IMG/VR virus record: IMGVR_UViG_3300046703_000335
Span: 146,409 to 210,408 of that record
Length of the DNA: 64,000 bases
Reading direction: 5' to 3' (one strand)
Shown: one piece after another, positions 14,335-37,058 of the stretch
How positions within the stretch are numbered: the stretch's first letter is position 1
Layout: each line of letters starts with the position of its first letter
Position numbers and translations under genes: made by a program
The notes under the pieces: generated by a model
The model's database searches: none
What the model saw: only the letters and a program-made list of their open reading frames with translations
Told to the model about the DNA's origin: nothing

Positions 14335-14667
14335 TTAATTTGTGTATAGCCAGCTTGGTTTGGAAGATATGCTAAAAGTACCCCCGCCACCACCTCTCAC
14401 AGTTGTAACCGGTTTACTCTCTGCTGAGCCATCCGCAAGATTCACTCCTGAACTGTTATCTACTCTGTCTCCAAGAGGATTACCAAACTTTGTGTCAGGA
14501 GACACACCACCACCAGTAGAATTACTTATAGGAATGTTTTGAAACAATTCCGGAGGTATGACACCACCACTTAGTACTTCTCCATCATTAGAGGAATAGG
14601 AAGCAAAATTCCCATTAATAATTACAATATTCTTATCTGTATAATTCTGCACTATTACTTTGTTCAT
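14335..14667 (-). CDS. Hypothetical Gly/Ser-rich protein
   Basis: 110-aa ORF with GGGG-type RBS in the minus-strand operon. Confidence 0.5.
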   Translation of the reverse strand: MNKVIVQNYTDKNIVIINGNFASYSSNDGEVLSGGVIPPELFQNIPISNSTGGGVSPDTKFGNPLGDRVDNSSGVNLADGSAESKPVTTVRGGGGGTFSISSKPSWLYTN

Positions 14668-14718
14668 ACTAATACCCCTTTATGTGTTTATACAACTACC
14701 TGTATTAATCAACTTAAT

Positions 14719-15243
14719 TTAAAAATTTGGTATAACTAAACTTGGATCATTCATATCTCTCTGTATCTGCCAATAGGTAGGATCTAAACCAGTTATTATA
14801 TTTGATAATTTTTTTAGCTCTTCTAAATTTTCTTTAAAAGCTACAGACATAATTACCGTCTCACATCTACCCTTAACTGCATTAAATAGCTTAATGGCGC
14901 TATCGTAAACTCCCTCACCACGATATGCATCATGATATTCTTTAGTACCATCAAAGCTAATTCCTATCCTATCAACATGGTCAGCTATCTCTGGTCTATA
15001 AAAAGTTCCATTAGTAGTAACTCCTACTTTAAACCCTTTACTTTTTAGTATATCACAAATATCCGCTAAATTTGATATAGTAAAAGGTTCACCACCAGTA
15101 ATGTACACCCATTCTATTTCACCAGCTTTTGATAATATTGTTTCCAAACTTTTATCAATATCTATTATTGCGGTACTCTTTGCACAACATCCGGCGCATG
15201 ATAAATTACAAGCATACGTAATTGGGAAAAGTATATGATTCAT
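14719..15243 (-). CDS. Minimal radical SAM protein
   Basis: CNLSCAGC (CxxxCxxC), ITGGEPF, VTTNGT, ISFDG..HDAYRG; 174 aa, no SPASM domain. Confidence 0.85.
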   Translation of the reverse strand: MNHILFPITYACNLSCAGCCAKSTAIIDIDKSLETILSKAGEIEWVYITGGEPFTISNLADICDILKSKGFKVGVTTNGTFYRPEIADHVDRIGISFDGTKEYHDAYRGEGVYDSAIKLFNAVKGRCETVIMSVAFKENLEELKKLSNIITGLDPTYWQIQRDMNDPSLVIPNF

Positions 15244-16145: not shown

Positions 16146-16201
16146 GTGTATTTCACTTTATATGAACTTGTTTATGGAACGCCATTTATTAATATTGCTT
16201 C

Positions 16202-16216
16202 ATAAACAGATTATTA
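16202..16216 (-). promoter_or_regulatory. Putative late promoter motif copy
   Basis: ATAAACAGATTATTA, 57 nt upstream of ATG 16145. Confidence 0.5.
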
Positions 16217-16225
16217 GAAAAAGTC

Positions 16226-16254
16226 TTGAAATACCCGATAATAAGTAGTATTAT
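16226..16254 (+). promoter_or_regulatory. Sigma70-type promoter for the nuclease-Mom fusion
   Basis: TTGAAA-N17-TATTAT, followed by GGAGG RBS and ATG 16287. Confidence 0.6.
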
Positions 16255-16286
16255 TAATATTAAGACAACCATGCTATGGAGGATAT

Positions 16287-18422
16287 ATGACAGCAGCACA
16301 AAAAGGTATTACTTTGCTTTTATGGTCTGAACAAGAAGATACACTACTCAAGGAGCTATATTTAAAAACACCTAAAGATATAATATTAACTAAGTTAAAC
16401 AGAACTTGGAAATCTATAAGATATAGGGCTAGTAGACTAAAGTTTAAACGAGACCCATCCATTATAAAACAGGATAATATAGAAGGTACTAAAAAAGCTA
16501 TGCTTGAAAAATATGGTGTAGAATACTCTACCCTTCTACCGGCTATGAAAGAAAAAAGTAGACAAACCAATTTGAAAAAAAGGGGAGTAGAGTATCCTTC
16601 ACAATCCAAAGAAGTTCGTGACAAGATAAAATTAGTAGTAAATGAGAGATATGGTGTAGATAATGTATTTCAGGCACAGAAAATAAAAGAAAAATCTGAA
16701 CAAACTATTTTAAAAAGATATGGAGTAAGATATATAAACCAAAGTCCAACTATTCGAGAGAAAACAAAAGAAACAAATCTTGAAAGATATGGAATATCAA
16801 ATACTTTTCAATTAACAGATAGGGTCGAAAAAGGAATGATTGAAAAGTATGGACAAAGAGTCCCACTTAATGTCCCTGAAATTGCTGAAAAAAAGAAAAA
16901 AACGAGTTTAGAAAAATATGGTGTTGAAGTAGCTTCAAAAAATGAAGCTGTAAAAAGAAAATTATCAGAAACTTTAAAAACTGCTGTCGTTAGAGAAAAA
17001 AAATATCAAGCATTAAAGAAAAAAGGCTCTTTTAATTATTCTAATGAAGAGCTTGCATTCGCTAATTATTTATTAATAGCTGATCCAGACCTTAAAACTC
17101 ATCAGCTTCATCCTATAACAAAACATGTGATAGATTACTATATGCCCAGATATGACTTATGGGTACAATATGACGGAACTTATTGGCACGGTAAGGGAGA
17201 AGCAGTGCATACTGGACCTCAAGCCATATCCATAGAGAAGATAAAAGCAAAAGATATCTATCAGAACGAAAATATTCCAAATTTAATAAGATTCTGGTCA
17301 GATGATGTTAATGAAGCTATAAAAAAAGGCAGCATATTTACTCTTATTGAAATAAAAATAAAAGAAAAGATAAATACTACTGAGGATATATTTGTGTGCC
17401 ACCAGTATCGAAAAAAAATAGAACATTATACTGAAGACCGAGACAATTTACCATTTAACCCAGATAATATCAAAGCATCAAATTTTACGCTTATAAAGGA
17501 GGAACTATCAACAGAGATCGTAGAGTTTATAAAAAAATATGAATGGTTAGAAACTGTTGGAGTTAATCCTAAATGGTGTTTCACAGCTCGATACAATGAT
17601 AAACTTGGAGGAGTAGTCCTAATAAATGAACCTACTGCTTATTCAAAAATGCTGGGTAAAGATACCCCCATCTATGAAGCCCTTATACAAAGAGGTGCTA
17701 CAGCTTCCTGGACCCCTAAAAACCTCGGAAGCAGACTTGTTATGTTCTCTTGTAAGTGGATGGTAGCTAATACCCCAAAACGAATCTTTGTAGGTTATGC
17801 TGATCCTTCTGCTAAAGAACGCGGCATTATCTATCAAGCATGTAATTTTGATTATTTAGGGGATAATTTTGGGAATAGCTACCTATACAAGCACCCTGAA
17901 ATAAATCGAACATTTACATCCCAATATCTAAAAAGAACATCAACATTTAGACGCTGGTGTCTTCTTAATAAAATTGAACTGAGAAAAGAATGGTTTAAAG
18001 AAAATGGGTTTAAGAATTTGGAGATTATACCTCATGAAATTAAAAATATGTGGTATCTCTGGATAAAAGATATAATAAGCAGTGCAGAAAGAATAACTAT
18101 AAGTAAAAAGATGAAATATGCTATTCTACTCTATAGAGATAAAAAAGACAGAAAAATACTTGAACCTTTAAAAAAATATGACAAATTTCCATACAATAAA
18201 ATTTATAACACAACAAACCAGCTAACTCTCCGACCACGCGGAAAAAACAATCATGGCTTAACAGCAGATAGAAAAAATCCAGAAAAAATTGAATTTATAT
18301 TAAAAAATCATAGCACTATGTCCAGGTCAGTTATGGCCCTAGAGTTGAATGAAACTCAACGATGGGTAAAAAGACAAGTAAATAAATTAGTATCTGAGAA
18401 TAAGATTAAGCCAAAGAGATAA
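16287..18422 (+). CDS. Fusion: KYGV-repeat DNA-binding region + PD-(D/E)XK (Vsr/DUF559-like) endonuclease + Mom-like GNAT DNA-modification domain + C-terminal HTH
   Basis: Repeats (E/K)(K/R)YGV...; IDYYMPRYDLWVQYDGTYWHG; FIKKYEWL..RGATASWTPKNLGSRLV..GYADPSAKERGIIYQACNFDYLG; opposite strand to neighbours. Confidence 0.7.
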   Translation: MTAAQKGITLLLWSEQEDTLLKELYLKTPKDIILTKLNRTWKSIRYRASRLKFKRDPSIIKQDNIEGTKKAMLEKYGVEYSTLLPAMKEKSRQTNLKKRGVEYPSQSKEVRDKIKLVVNERYGVDNVFQAQKIKEKSEQTILKRYGVRYINQSPTIREKTKETNLERYGISNTFQLTDRVEKGMIEKYGQRVPLNVPEIAEKKKKTSLEKYGVEVASKNEAVKRKLSETLKTAVVREKKYQALKKKGSFNYSNEELAFANYLLIADPDLKTHQLHPITKHVIDYYMPRYDLWVQYDGTYWHGKGEAVHTGPQAISIEKIKAKDIYQNENIPNLIRFWSDDVNEAIKKGSIFTLIEIKIKEKINTTEDIFVCHQYRKKIEHYTEDRDNLPFNPDNIKASNFTLIKEELSTEIVEFIKKYEWLETVGVNPKWCFTARYNDKLGGVVLINEPTAYSKMLGKDTPIYEALIQRGATASWTPKNLGSRLVMFSCKWMVANTPKRIFVGYADPSAKERGIIYQACNFDYLGDNFGNSYLYKHPEINRTFTSQYLKRTSTFRRWCLLNKIELRKEWFKENGFKNLEIIPHEIKNMWYLWIKDIISSAERITISKKMKYAILLYRDKKDRKILEPLKKYDKFPYNKIYNTTNQLTLRPRGKNNHGLTADRKNPEKIEFILKNHSTMSRSVMALELNETQRWVKRQVNKLVSENKIKPKR

Positions 18423-18474
18423 GTACTTATCAAAAAGCATGTTAAGGATTATTTTTATATAATCCTCTTGGTCC

Positions 18475-19389
18475 TTAACTCCAACCCCCCCTTGCACCGG
18501 ACACGAAGTTTCTACGGCTTTGGACCCCCGGACGTGAATACGGTCCCAGGGCCGAACTGATACCTATACCGTAACGAGGCTGTTTTAGTCCTATAGCAAT
18601 CTTTATAGATCTCTTAGCTTGGTCAAGAAGCTTATCGTATTCACCTTCAAAAGAATCTCTCATTGATTGATACTTAGATGATTTCTCTATATTAAGAGAT
18701 ACACCACTGATGCTATAATCATATTCGTCAACTATCCAATTCAAAGCAAGAGCCCCGCAAGCCAGTGATGCGGACTTAAGAAGAATAACAGCTCTCCATC
18801 TATCTGGAGTTTGAAATAATGTTATACCTGTCACCGGAGGAGCCGTATTGAAATAATCAACAGCCATAAGTAGATACTCATAGAGTTCATAATCTTCCCA
18901 CACGTAACCAAATACCTGAGCTTGTGCTTGTATGAACTTTTCACTCGCCGGGGGACGAAATCTATAATTACGATCGGGATTATTATCCCTTAGCATAATT
19001 CTTAACCTTCTTACGAGCAACTGCTCAGAATCAACACTATTAATATCTGTCTTTACATCTTTAGCAACAACATTAAATTCCTGAACAACTTGAATTGTAG
19101 GAGATCCTGAAGTTTCCCTAAAATTCCATCGTACTAGCCAGTCTCCGATATTTGCATCTAAGGGTATGGTAATATTCACATAATATTGACCTACCCCCAT
19201 GGTAGCGGGGATTTGATCTGGAGGCCCAATAAGAACTTCAACACCTGTAGTATAATCAAATATAGAAAATCTAATATAATAGGGATCTACCAAATTTCCG
19301 ATATTATCCCGGATTAATATTTTCAAATCTTCTTGGGTAAGAGTTTGTCCCGGTTGGTATGCTACTGACATATTAAATTCCTCGATCAA
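18475..19389 (-). CDS. Probable head-tail adaptor/neck protein
   Basis: N-terminal Ig-like domain, then helical LRIMLRD...WEDYELYEYLLMAVDYFN...YDYSISGVSLNIEKSSKYQ; start may be ATG 19371. Confidence 0.55.
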   Translation of the reverse strand: MIEEFNMSVAYQPGQTLTQEDLKILIRDNIGNLVDPYYIRFSIFDYTTGVEVLIGPPDQIPATMGVGQYYVNITIPLDANIGDWLVRWNFRETSGSPTIQVVQEFNVVAKDVKTDINSVDSEQLLVRRLRIMLRDNNPDRNYRFRPPASEKFIQAQAQVFGYVWEDYELYEYLLMAVDYFNTAPPVTGITLFQTPDRWRAVILLKSASLACGALALNWIVDEYDYSISGVSLNIEKSSKYQSMRDSFEGEYDKLLDQAKRSIKIAIGLKQPRYGIGISSALGPYSRPGVQSRRNFVSGARGGWS

Positions 19390-34475: not shown

Positions 34476-37058
34476 TTACATAAACTCTTTTAAGAATCTT
34501 CCATGATCAGCAGCAATAGGAGCTACTTTGAAAAGTTCTTCTTTTAGCGAAGCATATTTCTTACCAGCATTAAACAATCGCTTCATCTTAAGAGTATAAT
34601 TATTTCCTCGAATCTTCCCATACTCATAGAAGGACAGAGCTTTATTCTGTGCGAGGCATTCTTTAAAATACTCTGACACTATTATAGTAGGAGTCTCAGC
34701 CTGATATTGTGGTATCATCCCACAGGCTTCTATAAACTTATTCCAACTACCATAATAGTGCTCAATAACATGTGAGGGTGCCCCCAAAATTGATTTTTCA
34801 CGATAGGTCTCTCGAGACATCCCTAATTTTAAGCTAACTTCTTTAAACTTATTCTGGATTGTATTCTCGTCAAAAGATACCGAAAAAGCTCTTTTATTTA
34901 CTTCATGTGGAGCATCAGTGCACTTTATAATATTATCATAACTGTTTTTTAAGTTAACCCAGTTAATCGAGTCCTTAACATGTCTGGAAAACAACAAGAT
35001 AACTTCATAACTGTCTGAGGTAGTCACATGCTTAAAAGGTATTCTCAACACTTTAAATAACTTATACCCTAAATTACTACATGTGTTTATTGATCTTTCA
35101 ATAAGGGGAACTTTTTGGTTGGGGCTATAACAGACACCGAATACTCCATCCTCCCTCAAGGATTTAATACAACCTTTTACAGTAGCATCCCAATACTGAG
35201 TCAACCAATCGGAAAGTTCTGGAAATCTATTGATACTTTGAGATTCTTCATTAGAATAGCTTTCATAATCAAAGTATGGTGGTGATGAAAATGCTAATCC
35301 AAAATAATTCGTGTAAGGGATATCAACTTCAGAGCCCTTATTGTGTACACAATAATTTCCCCCTAAGTTAGCTTTTACAAATGCTCCGAAATTTAATAGA
35401 TTTTCATATGTTATAGTATTAGGCTCAAAACCTACATACTCCATACCTAAAGACATTGCTGCCAGCATCCTTGAACCAAAACCAGCAGAATAATCTAATA
35501 CCTTACCATTTTTACAAAAGTTGGCATATATATACCTAGCTATTGAGGGCTTAAAGTTACTTACAACAGTATTCATTAACTTTAGCCCTTTACGCATTGA
35601 AGAATCATTTATTCTATCTGCGTACCTCAACCTATTCTCTACTAACTTTTTAAAAAAAGTCTCATCAACCCATACATCTATAGGTGCTGGATAACCTTTA
35701 CGTTTACTGCTATATATATTCGGAAAAAACTTCTCGCATAATTCCATCCCAGAGGTGTTAAAGCTTAAGAGATCGCCATCACATGTTGAAATCCCGTTGT
35801 CTTTAAAGCTCCTTAACAAATAAAGAGCCCTACTGTCTGATATGTCTGAAAATGGAAAAGGTTTCCCCCAATATTGCTCAAAAGTCATATTAAACATCCG
35901 GGCCTTCATAACATCATTACCTACCCTATAAAATTTAGGATGTACCATTAATGGGGTTAAGGTATTAACCTTATCGGGGATTAAGAACTCTTCAGGTATC
36001 TTATATAGGACATCCGGAGTGGCTACTTGATATACAATATCAAAAAATTCCTTATAAAATTTTTTAGAAAAACTTATCCCACTTTTATAAAGCTGAAAAC
36101 CCCACCCCAACTTATTCTCTAAAAAATCAACAAAAGCACTTAGTTGTTCCTTTATAGGGCAATAATTATTAATTATAAGAAATCGAGAATCATCATCGTA
36201 ATAACCATCATCTATAAACCAATAGGCCAATATTCTTTCATCCCAGTACTCTGAAATTAAGTCTATTGGAATTAGCTTACCTTCAACACCCTCTTTATAA
36301 AAAGATTCTCTAAACTTTGAGAAATGTTCACTCTGAATTGTTGCAAAACGTAACCCTGTTCCGTTATCACAGGGGTAGCAATTAGTGGAATAAGGTTCTA
36401 AAAGTTTATGTTTTAAACGAAGGTACTGCTCTTGTTTTAATGAGTGACTCTCATAATATCTTGGAGAAGAATCTATTCCACCATCCCCAAGTAGACCACC
36501 AATAATTAAGACAATCTGATTATGTGTTAAAGGAGGAGACTGCTTCTGTGTTTTTAATAAAATCCCTTTATCTTGTATTATAGGTCTCCAAGTAGTTTTT
36601 GAAACACCATATTTAGAAGAAAATTCTTCTTGTGTTAATTCATAATAATCTTTTTCAAGAACTTCTTTTGGAGTCTGTATGACTCTTTCTTTTTGTATAT
36701 CATTAACTTTTATAGATATCCCAAGATTCAATTTCTTCCTTCTATATGCTACACCCTCTCCAGACATCTTAAAAAGTTTGCCAATATTTGAATCTGTTTT
36801 TCCTTCAGCGTGCAAGGTTCTCAAGATATCATCAGTGAGTTTATTCTTAAGATCTTTTCGTATACCCTCATACACCACAGTAATTTTCGAGTTATATGCC
36901 CCTCTACTATCCGAAGTAATACCATAGGTTTTCATTCGCTTAAAGATTGCATCTTCTGAGACACCAAAAATTCCACCTATAGCTTTTGCAGTAAAACCAA
37001 AATCGCAATATAGCCTTTTTATGGATTCCATATTTAATTCTTCGATAGTATACTGCAT
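34476..37058 (-). CDS. Fusion: HTH repeats + LAGLIDADG endonuclease + amino (N4C/N6A) DNA methyltransferase + homing-endonuclease-associated repeat
   Basis: IIGGLLGDGGI and LAYWFIDDGYY; MTase motif I LDYSAGFGSR and motif IV FSSPPYFDYE; PSHVIEHYYGSWNKFIEACG; 860 aa. Confidence 0.8.
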   Translation of the reverse strand: MQYTIEELNMESIKRLYCDFGFTAKAIGGIFGVSEDAIFKRMKTYGITSDSRGAYNSKITVVYEGIRKDLKNKLTDDILRTLHAEGKTDSNIGKLFKMSGEGVAYRRKKLNLGISIKVNDIQKERVIQTPKEVLEKDYYELTQEEFSSKYGVSKTTWRPIIQDKGILLKTQKQSPPLTHNQIVLIIGGLLGDGGIDSSPRYYESHSLKQEQYLRLKHKLLEPYSTNCYPCDNGTGLRFATIQSEHFSKFRESFYKEGVEGKLIPIDLISEYWDERILAYWFIDDGYYDDDSRFLIINNYCPIKEQLSAFVDFLENKLGWGFQLYKSGISFSKKFYKEFFDIVYQVATPDVLYKIPEEFLIPDKVNTLTPLMVHPKFYRVGNDVMKARMFNMTFEQYWGKPFPFSDISDSRALYLLRSFKDNGISTCDGDLLSFNTSGMELCEKFFPNIYSSKRKGYPAPIDVWVDETFFKKLVENRLRYADRINDSSMRKGLKLMNTVVSNFKPSIARYIYANFCKNGKVLDYSAGFGSRMLAAMSLGMEYVGFEPNTITYENLLNFGAFVKANLGGNYCVHNKGSEVDIPYTNYFGLAFSSPPYFDYESYSNEESQSINRFPELSDWLTQYWDATVKGCIKSLREDGVFGVCYSPNQKVPLIERSINTCSNLGYKLFKVLRIPFKHVTTSDSYEVILLFSRHVKDSINWVNLKNSYDNIIKCTDAPHEVNKRAFSVSFDENTIQNKFKEVSLKLGMSRETYREKSILGAPSHVIEHYYGSWNKFIEACGMIPQYQAETPTIIVSEYFKECLAQNKALSFYEYGKIRGNNYTLKMKRLFNAGKKYASLKEELFKVAPIAADHGRFLKEFM

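What the first reader, a model, noticed from the sequence alone, without database searches (positions are those of the whole stretch)
16287..18422. Second nuclease-modifier fusion: PD-(D/E)XK endonuclease joined to a Mom-like acyltransferase
Seen: KYGV repeats, a Vsr/DUF559-like motif (IDYY..WVQYDGTYWHG; Gln where Glu is usual) and a GNAT region with YADPSAKERGIIYQACNFDYLG. It is inserted antisense in the neck operon with its own TTGAAA-N17-TATTAT promoter. Known: Mu Mom is a GNAT-fold enzyme that hypermodifies adenine and blocks restriction. Inference: together with the LAGLIDADG-MTase, this shows two independent cases of homing-endonuclease scaffolds carrying DNA-modifying enzymes, possibly a general class of mobile cut-and-protect genes.
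Basis: partly seen in the sequence, partly recalled or inferred. Interest (0 to 1): 0.72.

Follow-up and report, generated by a model that had tools for sequence, protein, structure and literature searches.

The report
Hef-type homing nuclease fused to Mom
A large uncultured peat/sediment phage carries a mobile gene that joins a site-specific DNA-cutting enzyme to a relative of phage Mu's Mom adenine-modifying enzyme; this type of fusion was already noted in jumbo phages in 2021, but no member has been tested.

Summary
ORF 16287-18422 (+), 711 aa, lies antisense among minus-strand genes. It encodes five modules:
- a SANT-like N-terminus;
- seven 23-residue KYGV repeats;
- a Vsr-fold 'EDxHD'/Hef-type nuclease (Pfam DUF7487; VIA Z 12 to Vsr);
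- a Mom-family GNAT domain (above the Pfam cutoff; best PDB match is Mu Mom 8BV8, E 1.6e-9);
- a putative HTH tail.

Nuclease residues E255/D283/D296/H301/D323 and Mom residues R469/S482/D506/Y516 (= Mu R111/S124/D149/Y159) are invariant or nearly so in 49 homologs. dN/dS is about 0.08 in both domains.

The gene behaves as a mobile element. One relative has an empty site. A near-identical phage has a mosaic allele and a co-conversion-like gradient in the neighbouring gene. Another relative holds a LAGLIDADG-methyltransferase at the same site, sharing the HTH tail.

The same Mom lineage is also fused to LAGLIDADG and endonuclease VII/HNH nucleases.

This is not a new kind. Iyer et al. 2021 described Mom-REase fusions in jumbo phages, and about 90 proteins with this architecture exist in metagenomes. 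The 'cut-and-protect' mechanism is inferred. The 'neck operon' and promoter claims are unverified.

The parts
16287..18422 (+). Complete CDS of the 711-aa nuclease-Mom fusion protein (P0001)
   Evidence: ORF list and translation. Pfam DUF7487 1.1e-32 plus Mom 6e-8, 33 bits vs cutoff 27.1. dN/dS 0.10 against the 83%-identical ortholog.
16226..16254 (+). Promoter-like hexamers TTGAAA-N17-TATTAT
   Evidence: Found by the scan, 10 of 12 matches. The site count in the region equals the shuffle expectation, so this is a candidate only.
16278..16282 (+). GGAGG ribosome-binding site, 4 nt upstream of the ATG
   Evidence: Read directly from the sequence.
16314..16454 (+). SANT/Myb-like N-terminal module (residues ~10-56, W-x2-EED...W...R)
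   Evidence: Aligns with a motif present in 1-3 copies in homologs, some of which carry Pfam Myb hits. There is no significant Pfam hit in P0001 itself.
16467..16982 (+). Seven 23-residue KYGV helical-hairpin repeats (residues ~61-232), presumed DNA-binding array
   Evidence: Regex periodicity. The AlphaFold model shows tandem helix hairpins, pLDDT 92. This is the N-terminal part of DUF7487.
16920..16930 (.). Recombination breakpoint inside the gene: ~100% identity to L007 upstream, 55-69% downstream
   Evidence: 100-nt identity profile; blastn segments. Short divergent contigs in run X3 also end at 16887-16928.
17019..17381 (+). Vsr-fold EDxHD (Hef-type) nuclease core, residues ~245-365; E255, D283, D296, H301, D323
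   Evidence: VIA-align: Vsr 1cw0 Z 12.0, I-Bth0305I Z 9.3. Foldseek. Alignment register to E. coli Vsr. Residues invariant or near-invariant.
17397..18200 (+). Mom-family GNAT module, residues ~371-638; R469, S482, D506, Y516
   Evidence: Pfam and PHROGs. Alignment to 8BV8 and Mu Mom. Model pLDDT 93 with top PDB hit Mu Mom at E 1.6e-9.
18249..18419 (+). Putative HTH tail, residues ~655-711; absent from the L007 allele and shared with the L012 LAGLIDADG-MTase
   Evidence: 47% identity to P0123 residues 29-88, E 2.3e-13. Weak phrog_323 and HTH_24 hits. Deleted in L007.
16146..18505 (.). Extent of the inserted segment relative to the empty site in L011 (58-bp intergenic spacer there)
   Evidence: tblastn synteny and blastn junction mapping.
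18475..19389 (-). g304, the conserved neighbour whose 3' end abuts the fusion gene in every relative examined; its last ~300 nt show an 84-99% identity gradient to L007
15843..16145 (-). g100, the neighbour on the other side of the insertion site

Best explanation
The ORF encodes a free-standing, mobile homing-endonuclease-type gene of the Hef/EDxHD (Vsr-fold, DUF7487) family. Its nuclease is translationally fused to a catalytically competent Mom-family GNAT domain. It sits in a large (probably ~0.4-0.5 Mb) uncultured peat/sediment phage.

Proposed mechanism:
- The SANT-like module, the seven KYGV repeats and the HTH tail position the protein on DNA.
- The nuclease cuts cognate DNA of related phage genomes that lack the element, probably at or near the g304/g100 junction. 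Recombinational repair then copies the gene and adjacent sequence into them.
- The Mom domain, by analogy with Mu Mom, transfers an aminoacyl group from charged tRNA onto adenine N6 in double-stranded DNA. This marks the carrier's own genome so that it resists its own nuclease and/or host restriction.

Shown here: domain identities and folds, conservation of catalytic residues, purifying selection on every module, presence/absence and mosaic polymorphism at one site, and recurrent partnership of this Mom lineage with several nuclease folds.

Inferred: both enzymatic activities, the target site, and the self-protection logic.
For: Domains:
- Pfam DUF7487 plus Mom above cutoff; PHROGs homing endonuclease plus Mom-like.
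- Nuclease fold: Vsr Z 12.0, I-Bth0305I Z 9.3.
- Mom fold: 8BV8 at E 1.6e-9 vs about 1e-4 for other GNATs; hhalign to Mu Mom 90% probability, running to the PYPK C-terminus.

Catalytic residues:
- R469/S482/D506/Y516 align to Mu R111/S124/D149/Y159. R111 and S124 are essential, and D149A and Y159A strongly reduce activity (PMC13219725). All four are invariant in 49 homologs.
- E255/D283/D296/H301/D323 align to Vsr E25/D51/H64/H69/D97, the EDxHD set of PMC3239194. D283, D296, H301 and D323 are invariant and E255 is at least 90% conserved.

Selection: dN/dS is 0.08 for both the nuclease and Mom domains.

Mobility:
- Empty site in L011.
- In L007 the flanking proteins are 93-100% identical while the gene product is 64% identical.
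- Sharp breakpoint at 16920, tail deletion, and an 84->99% identity gradient in g304's 3' end.
- A LAGLIDADG-MTase sharing the HTH tail occupies the same site in L012.
- Nuclease-half relatives are annotated Hef or F-LimVIII homing endonucleases and are multicopy in Lak phages.

Coupling: among 104 complete representatives of this Mom lineage, 58 carry an N-terminal extension of at least 150 aa. Most of the family matches in these extensions are nucleases: endonuclease VII 24, Hef-like 14, HNH at least 7, LAGLIDADG 2-3.

Prior prediction of the same logic: Iyer et al. 2021.
Against: - No biochemical data exist for any member.
- Mu R151, essential in Mom, is Ser508 here and is variable in the family (K19/S7/A6/R6 of 49).
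- The counterparts of Mu H58/Y59 could not be aligned with confidence.
- The hhalign link of the nuclease core to Vsr is weak by sequence (13% probability), so the residue mapping rests on fold plus motif spacing.
- The gene occupies the same position next to g304 in phages whose copies are only 41-48% identical. That fits long vertical residence as well as repeated homing.
- Standalone members of the same Mom lineage exist (31% of representatives; Vibrio phage 501E54-1), so Mom does not need a nuclease.
- No empty-site variant was seen in the four metagenomic runs examined.
Confidence: 0.6

Rival explanations
1. Mobility engine plus cargo. The nuclease only mobilises the gene, as in an ordinary free-standing homing endonuclease. 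The Mom domain is a general anti-restriction enzyme that modifies the whole phage genome against host restriction systems and has no role in shielding the genome from its own nuclease.
For: Standalone enzymes of the same Mom lineage exist in DNA-metabolism gene blocks (Vibrio phage 501E54-1; 32 of 104 representatives). A nuclease-less derivative (P0096) is nested within the fused clade, so Mom is kept when the nuclease is lost. Mu Mom itself is a broad anti-restriction enzyme.
Against: Hitch-hiking needs only adjacency, not a translational fusion. Yet the fusion recurs with at least three unrelated nuclease folds, and LAGLIDADG-MTase fusions form a parallel case. That argues for a benefit of tethering both activities to the same DNA-binding modules.
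Confidence: 0.22
2. Single-chain restriction-modification enzyme that does not home. As Iyer et al. 2021 predicted, the nuclease degrades host or superinfecting-phage DNA in general, momylation protects the resident genome, and the gene is inherited vertically.
For: Published prediction for jumbo-phage Mom-REase fusions. The position next to g304 is conserved across phages with 41-83% identical copies. Purifying selection is strong on all modules.
Against: There is an empty site in L011, an allele swap with a sharp internal breakpoint, and a flank identity gradient in L007. An unrelated LAGLIDADG-MTase occupies the same site in L012. The nuclease family is the Hef/F-Lim homing type, with long DNA-binding arrays typical of rare-cutting enzymes.
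Confidence: 0.1
3. The Mom-like domain is not a DNA adenine modifier here. It serves as a DNA-binding or dimerisation module, or it acylates another substrate such as tRNA or protein.
For: R151 is not conserved. The H58/Y59 region differs (Y418/E419/W420 are the conserved residues there). Mu Mom is a dimer, and Vsr-type homing endonucleases need dimerisation.
Against: Four of the five best-supported catalytic residues are invariant across 49 sequences at 37-83% identity. dN/dS is 0.08. The closest structure is Mom and not tRNA-acetylating toxins or other GNATs.
Confidence: 0.06
4. The C-terminal region is only the ordinary C-terminus of Hef-like endonucleases, and the Mom resemblance is spurious.
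For: None found.
Against: Mom-less DUF7487 proteins end after the nuclease core. Pfam, PHROGs, hhalign and the fold search all identify Mom.
Confidence: 0.01

Closest known systems
Mom-REase fusions of jumbo phages (Iyer, Anantharaman, Krishnan, Burroughs and Aravind 2021, Viruses 13:63, section 3.4.7)
   Same: A Mom-family GNAT domain is fused to a restriction-endonuclease-fold DNase in a very large phage. The paper makes the same functional prediction: modification protects self DNA while the nuclease attacks other DNA.
   Different: That paper treats the nuclease as a restriction component and does not discuss homing, site polymorphism, KYGV repeats, or fusions to LAGLIDADG or HNH nucleases. 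The example checked here, PA5oct EST35_0196 (538 aa, annotated 'Hef-like homing endonuclease'), has NUMOD3/Zn-ribbon modules, only a sub-threshold Mom match, and only remote similarity to this protein.
Phage Mu Mom (PDB 8BV8; Silva et al. 2026, Nat Commun 17:4787)
   Same: It shares the GNAT fold and is the best structural match. R111, S124, D149 and Y159 and the C-terminal PYPK end align. An insertion is present at the position of Mom's HTH-like insert.
   Different: Sequence identity is only about 14-16% in the structural alignment. R151 is Ser here. The insert is larger. Mu Mom is a 231-aa standalone protein regulated by Com, not a nuclease fusion. The donor and product for this lineage are unknown.
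EDxHD / Vsr-like homing endonucleases: I-Bth0305I (PDB 3R3P) and phage Hef-type enzymes (Taylor et al. 2011; Sandegren et al. 2005)
   Same: It shares the Vsr-like catalytic fold (Z 9.3-12) and the five-residue active-site pattern. It is phage-borne, free-standing, with an N-terminal DNA-binding array. Relatives are annotated Hef or F-LimVIII.
   Different: I-Bth0305I is intron-encoded and uses NUMOD repeats. This protein uses 23-residue KYGV repeats plus a SANT-like module and carries two extra C-terminal modules (Mom and the HTH tail).
Type IIG / IIC single-chain restriction-modification enzymes (e.g. BpuSI, PDB 3S1S)
   Same: One polypeptide carries a PD-(D/E)XK-type nuclease and an adenine-N6-modifying domain. 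BpuSI appears among the structural matches of the nuclease core (Z 6.1).
   Different: Those enzymes use a SAM-dependent methyltransferase and a target-recognition domain, and they are cellular defence enzymes. Here the modifier is a Mom-type acyltransferase, and the gene behaves as a mobile phage element.
LAGLIDADG-methyltransferase fusions in the same phage group (window 34476-37058; L012 P0123)
   Same: A homing-type nuclease is fused to a DNA-modifying enzyme. P0123 shares the HTH module and occupies the same intergenic site.
   Different: The nuclease fold is unrelated and the modifier is a SAM-dependent N6/N4 methyltransferase. In L012 the gene runs in the same direction as its neighbours.

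Membership tests
Mom family (Pfam PF25680) | Profile match above Pfam's gathering score | tested here: met
   33.0 bits vs cutoff 27.1; 35.4 bits in the genome scan; phrog_1384 Mom-like at 6.6e-17 over residues 409-648.
Mom family (Pfam PF25680) | GNAT fold closest to Mu Mom among solved structures | tested here: met
   Model pLDDT 93. 8BV8 at E 1.6e-9, TM 0.62-0.63 by target; the next GNATs are at about 1e-4.
Mom family (Pfam PF25680) | Catalytic residues R111, S124, D149 and Y159 of Mu Mom | tested here: met
   They align to R469, S482, D506 and Y516, all invariant in 49 homologs. Residue roles are taken from PMC13219725.
Mom family (Pfam PF25680) | Essential R151 of Mu Mom | tested here: not met
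   It aligns to Ser508. The column is variable in the family (K19, S7, A6, R6 of 49). K510 and R512 lie nearby, but compensation was not tested.
Mom family (Pfam PF25680) | HTH-like insertion in the GNAT core (Mu residues ~175-209), essential for activity | tested here: inconclusive
   Extra helices occur at the equivalent position (model 175-229 = residues 545-599). hhalign bridges this region only with gaps. No superposition was inspected.
Mom family (Pfam PF25680) | tRNA-dependent transfer of glycine to adenine N6 in dsDNA | not testable with these tools
   Needs biochemistry. No tRNA genes are present in the window.
EDxHD / Hef-type Vsr-like homing endonucleases (Pfam DUF7487) | Profile match to DUF7487 | tested here: met
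   114.2 bits vs cutoff 27; phrog_3339 and phrog_12131 homing endonuclease.
EDxHD / Hef-type Vsr-like homing endonucleases (Pfam DUF7487) | Vsr-like catalytic fold | tested here: met
   Vsr 1cw0 Z 12.0, rmsd 2.5 A over 112 residues; I-Bth0305I Z 9.3 (93 of 97 residues); 3hrl Z 8.1. By sequence alone nothing in PDB is reached.
EDxHD / Hef-type Vsr-like homing endonucleases (Pfam DUF7487) | Active-site set E-D-x-H-D (Vsr E25, D51, H64, H69, D97) | tested here: met
   The alignment register gives E255, D283, D296, H301 and D323 (hhalign probability only 13%). D283, D296, H301 and D323 are invariant and E255 is at least 90% conserved.
EDxHD / Hef-type Vsr-like homing endonucleases (Pfam DUF7487) | Behaves as a mobile element (sporadic presence at a fixed site, co-conversion of flanks) | tested here: met
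   Empty site in L011, a different occupant in L012, and a mosaic allele with a flank gradient in L007. Cleavage and homing themselves are not testable here.
Canonical PD-(D/E)XK / DUF559 nucleases | Acidic residue in the (D/E)xK position (E of ExDG in DUF559) | tested here: not met
   Q294 is invariant in the fusion family and is the majority residue in Mom-less DUF7487 proteins (14 Q, 5 E, 1 A). The position corresponds to Vsr F62. The protein is therefore filed under the Vsr-type variant of the fold, not the canonical motif.
Jumbo-phage Mom-REase fusions (Iyer et al. 2021) | Mom domain and REase-fold nuclease in one polypeptide of a jumbo phage | tested here: met
   Both domains lie in one ORF. 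The record is 210 kb at an estimated 45% completeness, and relatives lie on 388-590 kb contigs.
Jumbo-phage Mom-REase fusions (Iyer et al. 2021) | Modification protects self DNA from the fused nuclease | not testable with these tools
   Requires expression, a modification assay and a cleavage assay.

The most novel reading that the evidence does not exclude
Nuclease-Mom and nuclease-methyltransferase fusions may form a polyphyletic class of self-immunising homing elements. A rare-cutting nuclease from any of at least three folds (Vsr-like EDxHD, LAGLIDADG, His-Me finger) is tethered to an adenine modifier. The modifier marks the element's own target site, so the carrier genome needs no protective sequence change in an essential neighbouring gene, while naive relatives are cut and converted. 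Different members, such as DUF7487-Mom and LAGLIDADG-MTase, can share an HTH module and compete for the same genomic site. If the Mom domain works as in Mu, this would also be the first homing or restriction system whose immunity depends on charged tRNA.
Probability: 0.3. Interest if true: 0.8.

Novelty: new member of a known kind. Interest (0 to 1): 0.52.

Why it matters
Mom's chemistry was solved only in 2026: glycine is transferred from Gly-tRNA to adenine N6 (PMC13219725). All biochemistry so far concerns small standalone enzymes.

This gene is an intact, strongly conserved representative of a large uncharacterised branch. In that branch more than half of the cluster representatives are fused to homing-type nucleases. 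The related phages also provide natural controls: an empty site, a swapped allele and an alternative occupant.

The locus therefore makes a concrete question testable. Can a homing endonuclease protect its own genome epigenetically, the way a restriction-modification system does, instead of relying on target-site sequence change? Such enzymes could also supply long-site nucleases with a built-in protective modifier.

The limits are clear. The architecture was already noted in 2021, the same domain pair appears in the precomputed Pfam annotations of about 90 database proteins, and nothing here demonstrates activity.

Tried and rejected
- **HTH tail search:** searching residues 640-711 in the large protein database found only the protein itself and its 83% ortholog. 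The word index is too insensitive for so short a domain, so the distribution of the tail is unknown beyond P0123.
- **Nuclease half vs PDB by sequence:** the profile search gave only chance hits. The link to Vsr and I-Bth0305I rests on fold.
- **Neighbour annotation:** PHROGs annotated only the radical-SAM protein among ten neighbours. Atlas leads for g304 (Mu gp36, T4 gp13 neck, gp6-like connector, SU10 adaptor) all scored below 0.9, so 'neck operon' is neither confirmed nor excluded.
- **Promoter and terminator:** counts do not exceed shuffles. The 3' intergenic hairpin (AGGATTAT...ATAATCCT, 18444-18466) has z = -1.3, not significant.
- **Megablast against 50,697 phage records:** no match. 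No GenBank phage has both halves in one hit covering at least 80% of the protein.
- **Structure job:** It was redone without that row.
- **Reads from four runs:** no deletion joint corresponding to an empty site was seen. Contig data cannot show absence.
- **tRNA scan:** the window encodes no tRNA.
- **Careful phylogeny:** it did not finish in the time allowed, so only the quick tree is reported.
- **Considered and rejected:** decay of the nuclease because of the Gln (it is a family-wide, non-catalytic position), and assembly chimerism (an independent contig spans both junctions).
Full report
**Observation**

GGAGG lies at 16278-16282, four bases before the ATG. All neighbouring ORFs are on the minus strand, and GC and AT skew invert across 16200-18400.

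The quoted motifs are all present. Seven KYGV-type repeats occur at residues 75, 98, 121, 144, 167, 187 and 210, with a 23-residue period. IDYY...WVQYDGTYWHG is at residues 282-302, and YADPSAKERGIIYQACNFDYLG at 504-525.

The TTGAAA-N17-TATTAT hexamers exist at 16226-16254. Promoter-like sites are no more frequent here than in shuffled sequence (15 vs 13.5 +/- 3.2), so this is only a candidate promoter.

The locus is not an assembly artefact. It recurs in peat, sediment and soil metagenomes from at least ten studies. One independent 176-kb contig spans 15000-20000, including both junctions, at 98.4% identity.

**Domain content**

Pfam finds DUF7487 (1.1e-32) and Mom (33 bits against a cutoff of 27.1). 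PHROGs finds homing-endonuclease families and the Mom-like family over residues 409-648 (6.6e-17).

An AlphaFold model of residues 60-372 (pLDDT 92) shows tandem helical hairpins followed by an alpha-beta-beta-beta-alpha-beta-alpha core. VIA-align places that core, residues ~250-365, on three structures:
- Vsr: Z 12.0, rmsd 2.5 A over 112 residues.
- The I-Bth0305I homing endonuclease catalytic domain: Z 9.3, 93 of 97 residues aligned.
- A DUF559-like protein (3hrl): Z 8.1.

Taylor et al. 2011 defined the Vsr-like 'EDxHD' homing family around I-Bth0305I and included phage Hef-type enzymes in it (PMC3239194). A profile alignment to E. coli Vsr is weak in score (13% probability) but falls in the expected register. 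It gives E255, D283, D296, H301 and D323 for Vsr E25, D51, H64, H69 and D97. D283, D296, H301 and D323 are invariant in 49 full-length homologs, and E255 is at least 90% conserved.

It corresponds to the non-catalytic Vsr F62. It is a family trait, not a sign of decay.

Isolated-phage relatives of the nuclease half are annotated Hef, F-LimVIII/F-LimX or homing endonuclease. They occur in 7-17 places per Lak megaphage genome.

**The Mom module**

The model of residues 371-650 (pLDDT 93) has Mu Mom (8BV8) as its best PDB match at E 1.6e-9. Ordinary GNATs follow at about 1e-4. hhalign of the family against Mu Mom gives 90% probability over 145 columns and runs to the C-terminal PYPK end of Mom.

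The 2026 structure-function paper identifies R111 and S124 as essential. It also lists D149, R151, Y159, H58, Y59 and an HTH-like insert as important (PMC13219725). Here R469, S482, D506 and Y516 align to R111, S124, D149 and Y159, and all four are invariant in 49 homologs.

R151 aligns to Ser508, a variable column that is Lys or Arg in about half the family. The counterparts of H58 and Y59 could not be aligned reliably.

Two smaller modules flank these domains. One is an N-terminal SANT/Myb-like motif, recognised through homologs that carry one to three copies. The other is a C-terminal tail (residues ~655-711) with weak HTH signals.

**Is the gene functional?**

Against its 83%-identical ortholog (L006), dN/dS is 0.09 for the repeats, 0.08 for the nuclease core, 0.08 for Mom and 0.15 for the tail, with dS about 1. 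Every module is under strong purifying selection.

**Is the gene mobile?**

Six related viral contigs were recovered with the neighbouring protein g304 as the query. Synteny mapping gave the following:
- L011 has an empty site, with the g304 and g100 homologs separated by 58 bp.
- L010 also lacks the gene.
- L008 and L009 carry copies that are 63% and 50% identical at the same site.
- L007 has flanking proteins that are 93-100% identical to the window, but its copy is only 64% identical.

A 100-nt identity profile of the window against L007 shows the following pattern:
- about 94-100% identity generally;
- about 100% from 16300 to 16920;
- an abrupt fall to 55-69% from 16920 to 18180;
- deletion of 18180-18470, which is the tail;
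- a gradient of 84, 91, 93 and 99% through the last 300 nt of g304.

This looks like a recombination or co-conversion tract centred on the nuclease-Mom portion.

In L012 the same site holds a 776-aa ORF. It has the same HTH module at its N-terminus (47% identity, E 2.3e-13), a LAGLIDADG domain and an N6/N4 DNA methyltransferase.

In more distant phages, whose copies are 41-48% identical, the gene again lies convergent with and adjacent to the 3' end of the g304 homolog. That fits either long residence or repeated homing to one conserved target.

**How general is the partnership?**

About 90 database proteins share the full DUF7487-Mom architecture at 38-83% identity. A profile of the Mom module finds 148 cluster representatives at E <= 1e-30. 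Of the 104 with a complete module, 58 have an N-terminal extension of at least 150 residues and 32 are standalone.

Most family matches in those extensions are nucleases:
- endonuclease VII / His-Me finger in 24;
- Hef-like in 14;
- other HNH families in at least 7;
- LAGLIDADG in 2-3;
- other REases in a few;
- an integrase in 1-2.

In a quick tree, the LAGLIDADG-fused copies and a nuclease-less SANT-Mom protein (P0096) sit inside a well-supported clade that is otherwise all DUF7487-fused. This suggests partner swapping and nuclease loss within one Mom lineage. The careful tree search did not finish.

It shares no module with this protein.

**Comparison with what is known**

Iyer et al. [quoted passage not shown] They predict that momylation protects phage DNA while the nuclease attacks host or superinfecting-phage DNA (PMC7824862). 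They do not mention homing endonucleases or LAGLIDADG.

PA5oct is the phage that paper says contains five momylating enzymes. Its gene EST35_0196 is annotated 'Hef-like homing endonuclease' and combines a Vsr-like core with a sub-threshold Mom-like C-terminus among structural genes. It has different DNA-binding modules and only remote similarity to this protein.

Other isolates (Muenster, AS-sw, Vibrio phage 501E54-1) carry standalone Mom genes. No GenBank phage record matches both halves together in one place.

The finding is therefore a new, well-preserved member of a kind already described computationally. The additional points from this analysis are the homing-type population behaviour and the multi-fold partnership.

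**Mechanism**

I favour a mobile Hef-type homing nuclease whose fused Mom domain modifies the carrier's DNA (confidence 0.6). Protection from its own nuclease is the most attractive reason for a translational fusion that recurs with unrelated nucleases and is paralleled by the nuclease-methyltransferase fusions.

The main rival (0.22) is that Mom is simply anti-restriction cargo. Standalone and nuclease-less members of the lineage support that view.

A non-homing restriction-modification reading (0.10) and a non-catalytic or non-DNA role for the Mom domain (0.06) are less likely for the reasons given under each rival.

None of the activities has been measured. 'Neck operon' and 'own promoter' remain unverified.

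Noticed in passing
L006:12156-14529, L019:8161-10535, L021:8427-9959 (relatives; not in the window): In several relatives the g304 homolog next to the fusion gene is itself interrupted. A 510-517-aa ORF carries an intein C-terminal splicing region (about 1e-6, below the Pfam cutoff). In L006 and L019 it also carries a DUF559/Vsr-like nuclease segment, followed by the last ~95 residues of g304. g304 therefore appears to be a hotspot for a second selfish element of the same nuclease superfamily. In L006 and L019 the gene is called as two ORFs, so the element may be frameshifted or not a true intein.
   Followed up: partly
L012:6876-9206 (+): A 776-aa HTH + LAGLIDADG + N6/N4-methyltransferase ORF occupies the g304/g100 site in place of the nuclease-Mom gene, in the opposite orientation relative to the window's gene. 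Its N-terminal HTH module is 47% identical to the C-terminal tail of the window protein.
   Followed up: partly
window 34476-37058 (-): This is the window's own 860-aa LAGLIDADG_2 (3e-15) plus methyltransferase-like protein. The MTase match is below the Pfam cutoff, but the region is 30% identical to the L012 MTase region (E 7e-15).
   Followed up: partly
window 14335-15243 (-): A 174-aa radical-SAM protein (phrog_1802, 3.6e-13) and a 110-aa Gly-rich ORF lie between the 805-aa beta-helix protein and g190. Both are present in L007. L006 and L008 lack both, and L011 has only a partial match to the 110-aa ORF. This is a second indel polymorphism in the same gene block.
   Followed up: no
G000:C1:72782-73183 (-), outside the window: A 380-aa open frame elsewhere in the same 210-kb record has weak KYGV-repeat matches (1.4e-5 and 1.5e-4). 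It may be a second DUF7487-type gene without Mom. Only one Mom domain was found in the record.
   Followed up: no
window 16887-16928: In run X3 several short, low-depth contigs match only this stretch of the repeat region and then diverge. The mosaic breakpoint against L007 is at the same place. The conserved repeat-coding sequence may serve as a recombination point between alleles or paralogs.
   Followed up: no
database proteins P0116, P0118, P0119, P0120, P0139 and others: The same Mom lineage is fused to Zn-ribbon plus endonuclease VII/HNH (His-Me finger) nucleases. At the level of 50%-identity clusters these outnumber the DUF7487 fusions (24 vs 14 of 58). One or two members carry a phage-integrase domain instead.
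   Followed up: partly
window 18444-18466: An 8-bp inverted repeat (AGGATTAT / ATAATCCT) lies in the 52-bp gap between the convergent stop codons of the fusion gene and g304. Its folding energy is not significantly better than shuffles (z = -1.3).
   Followed up: yes
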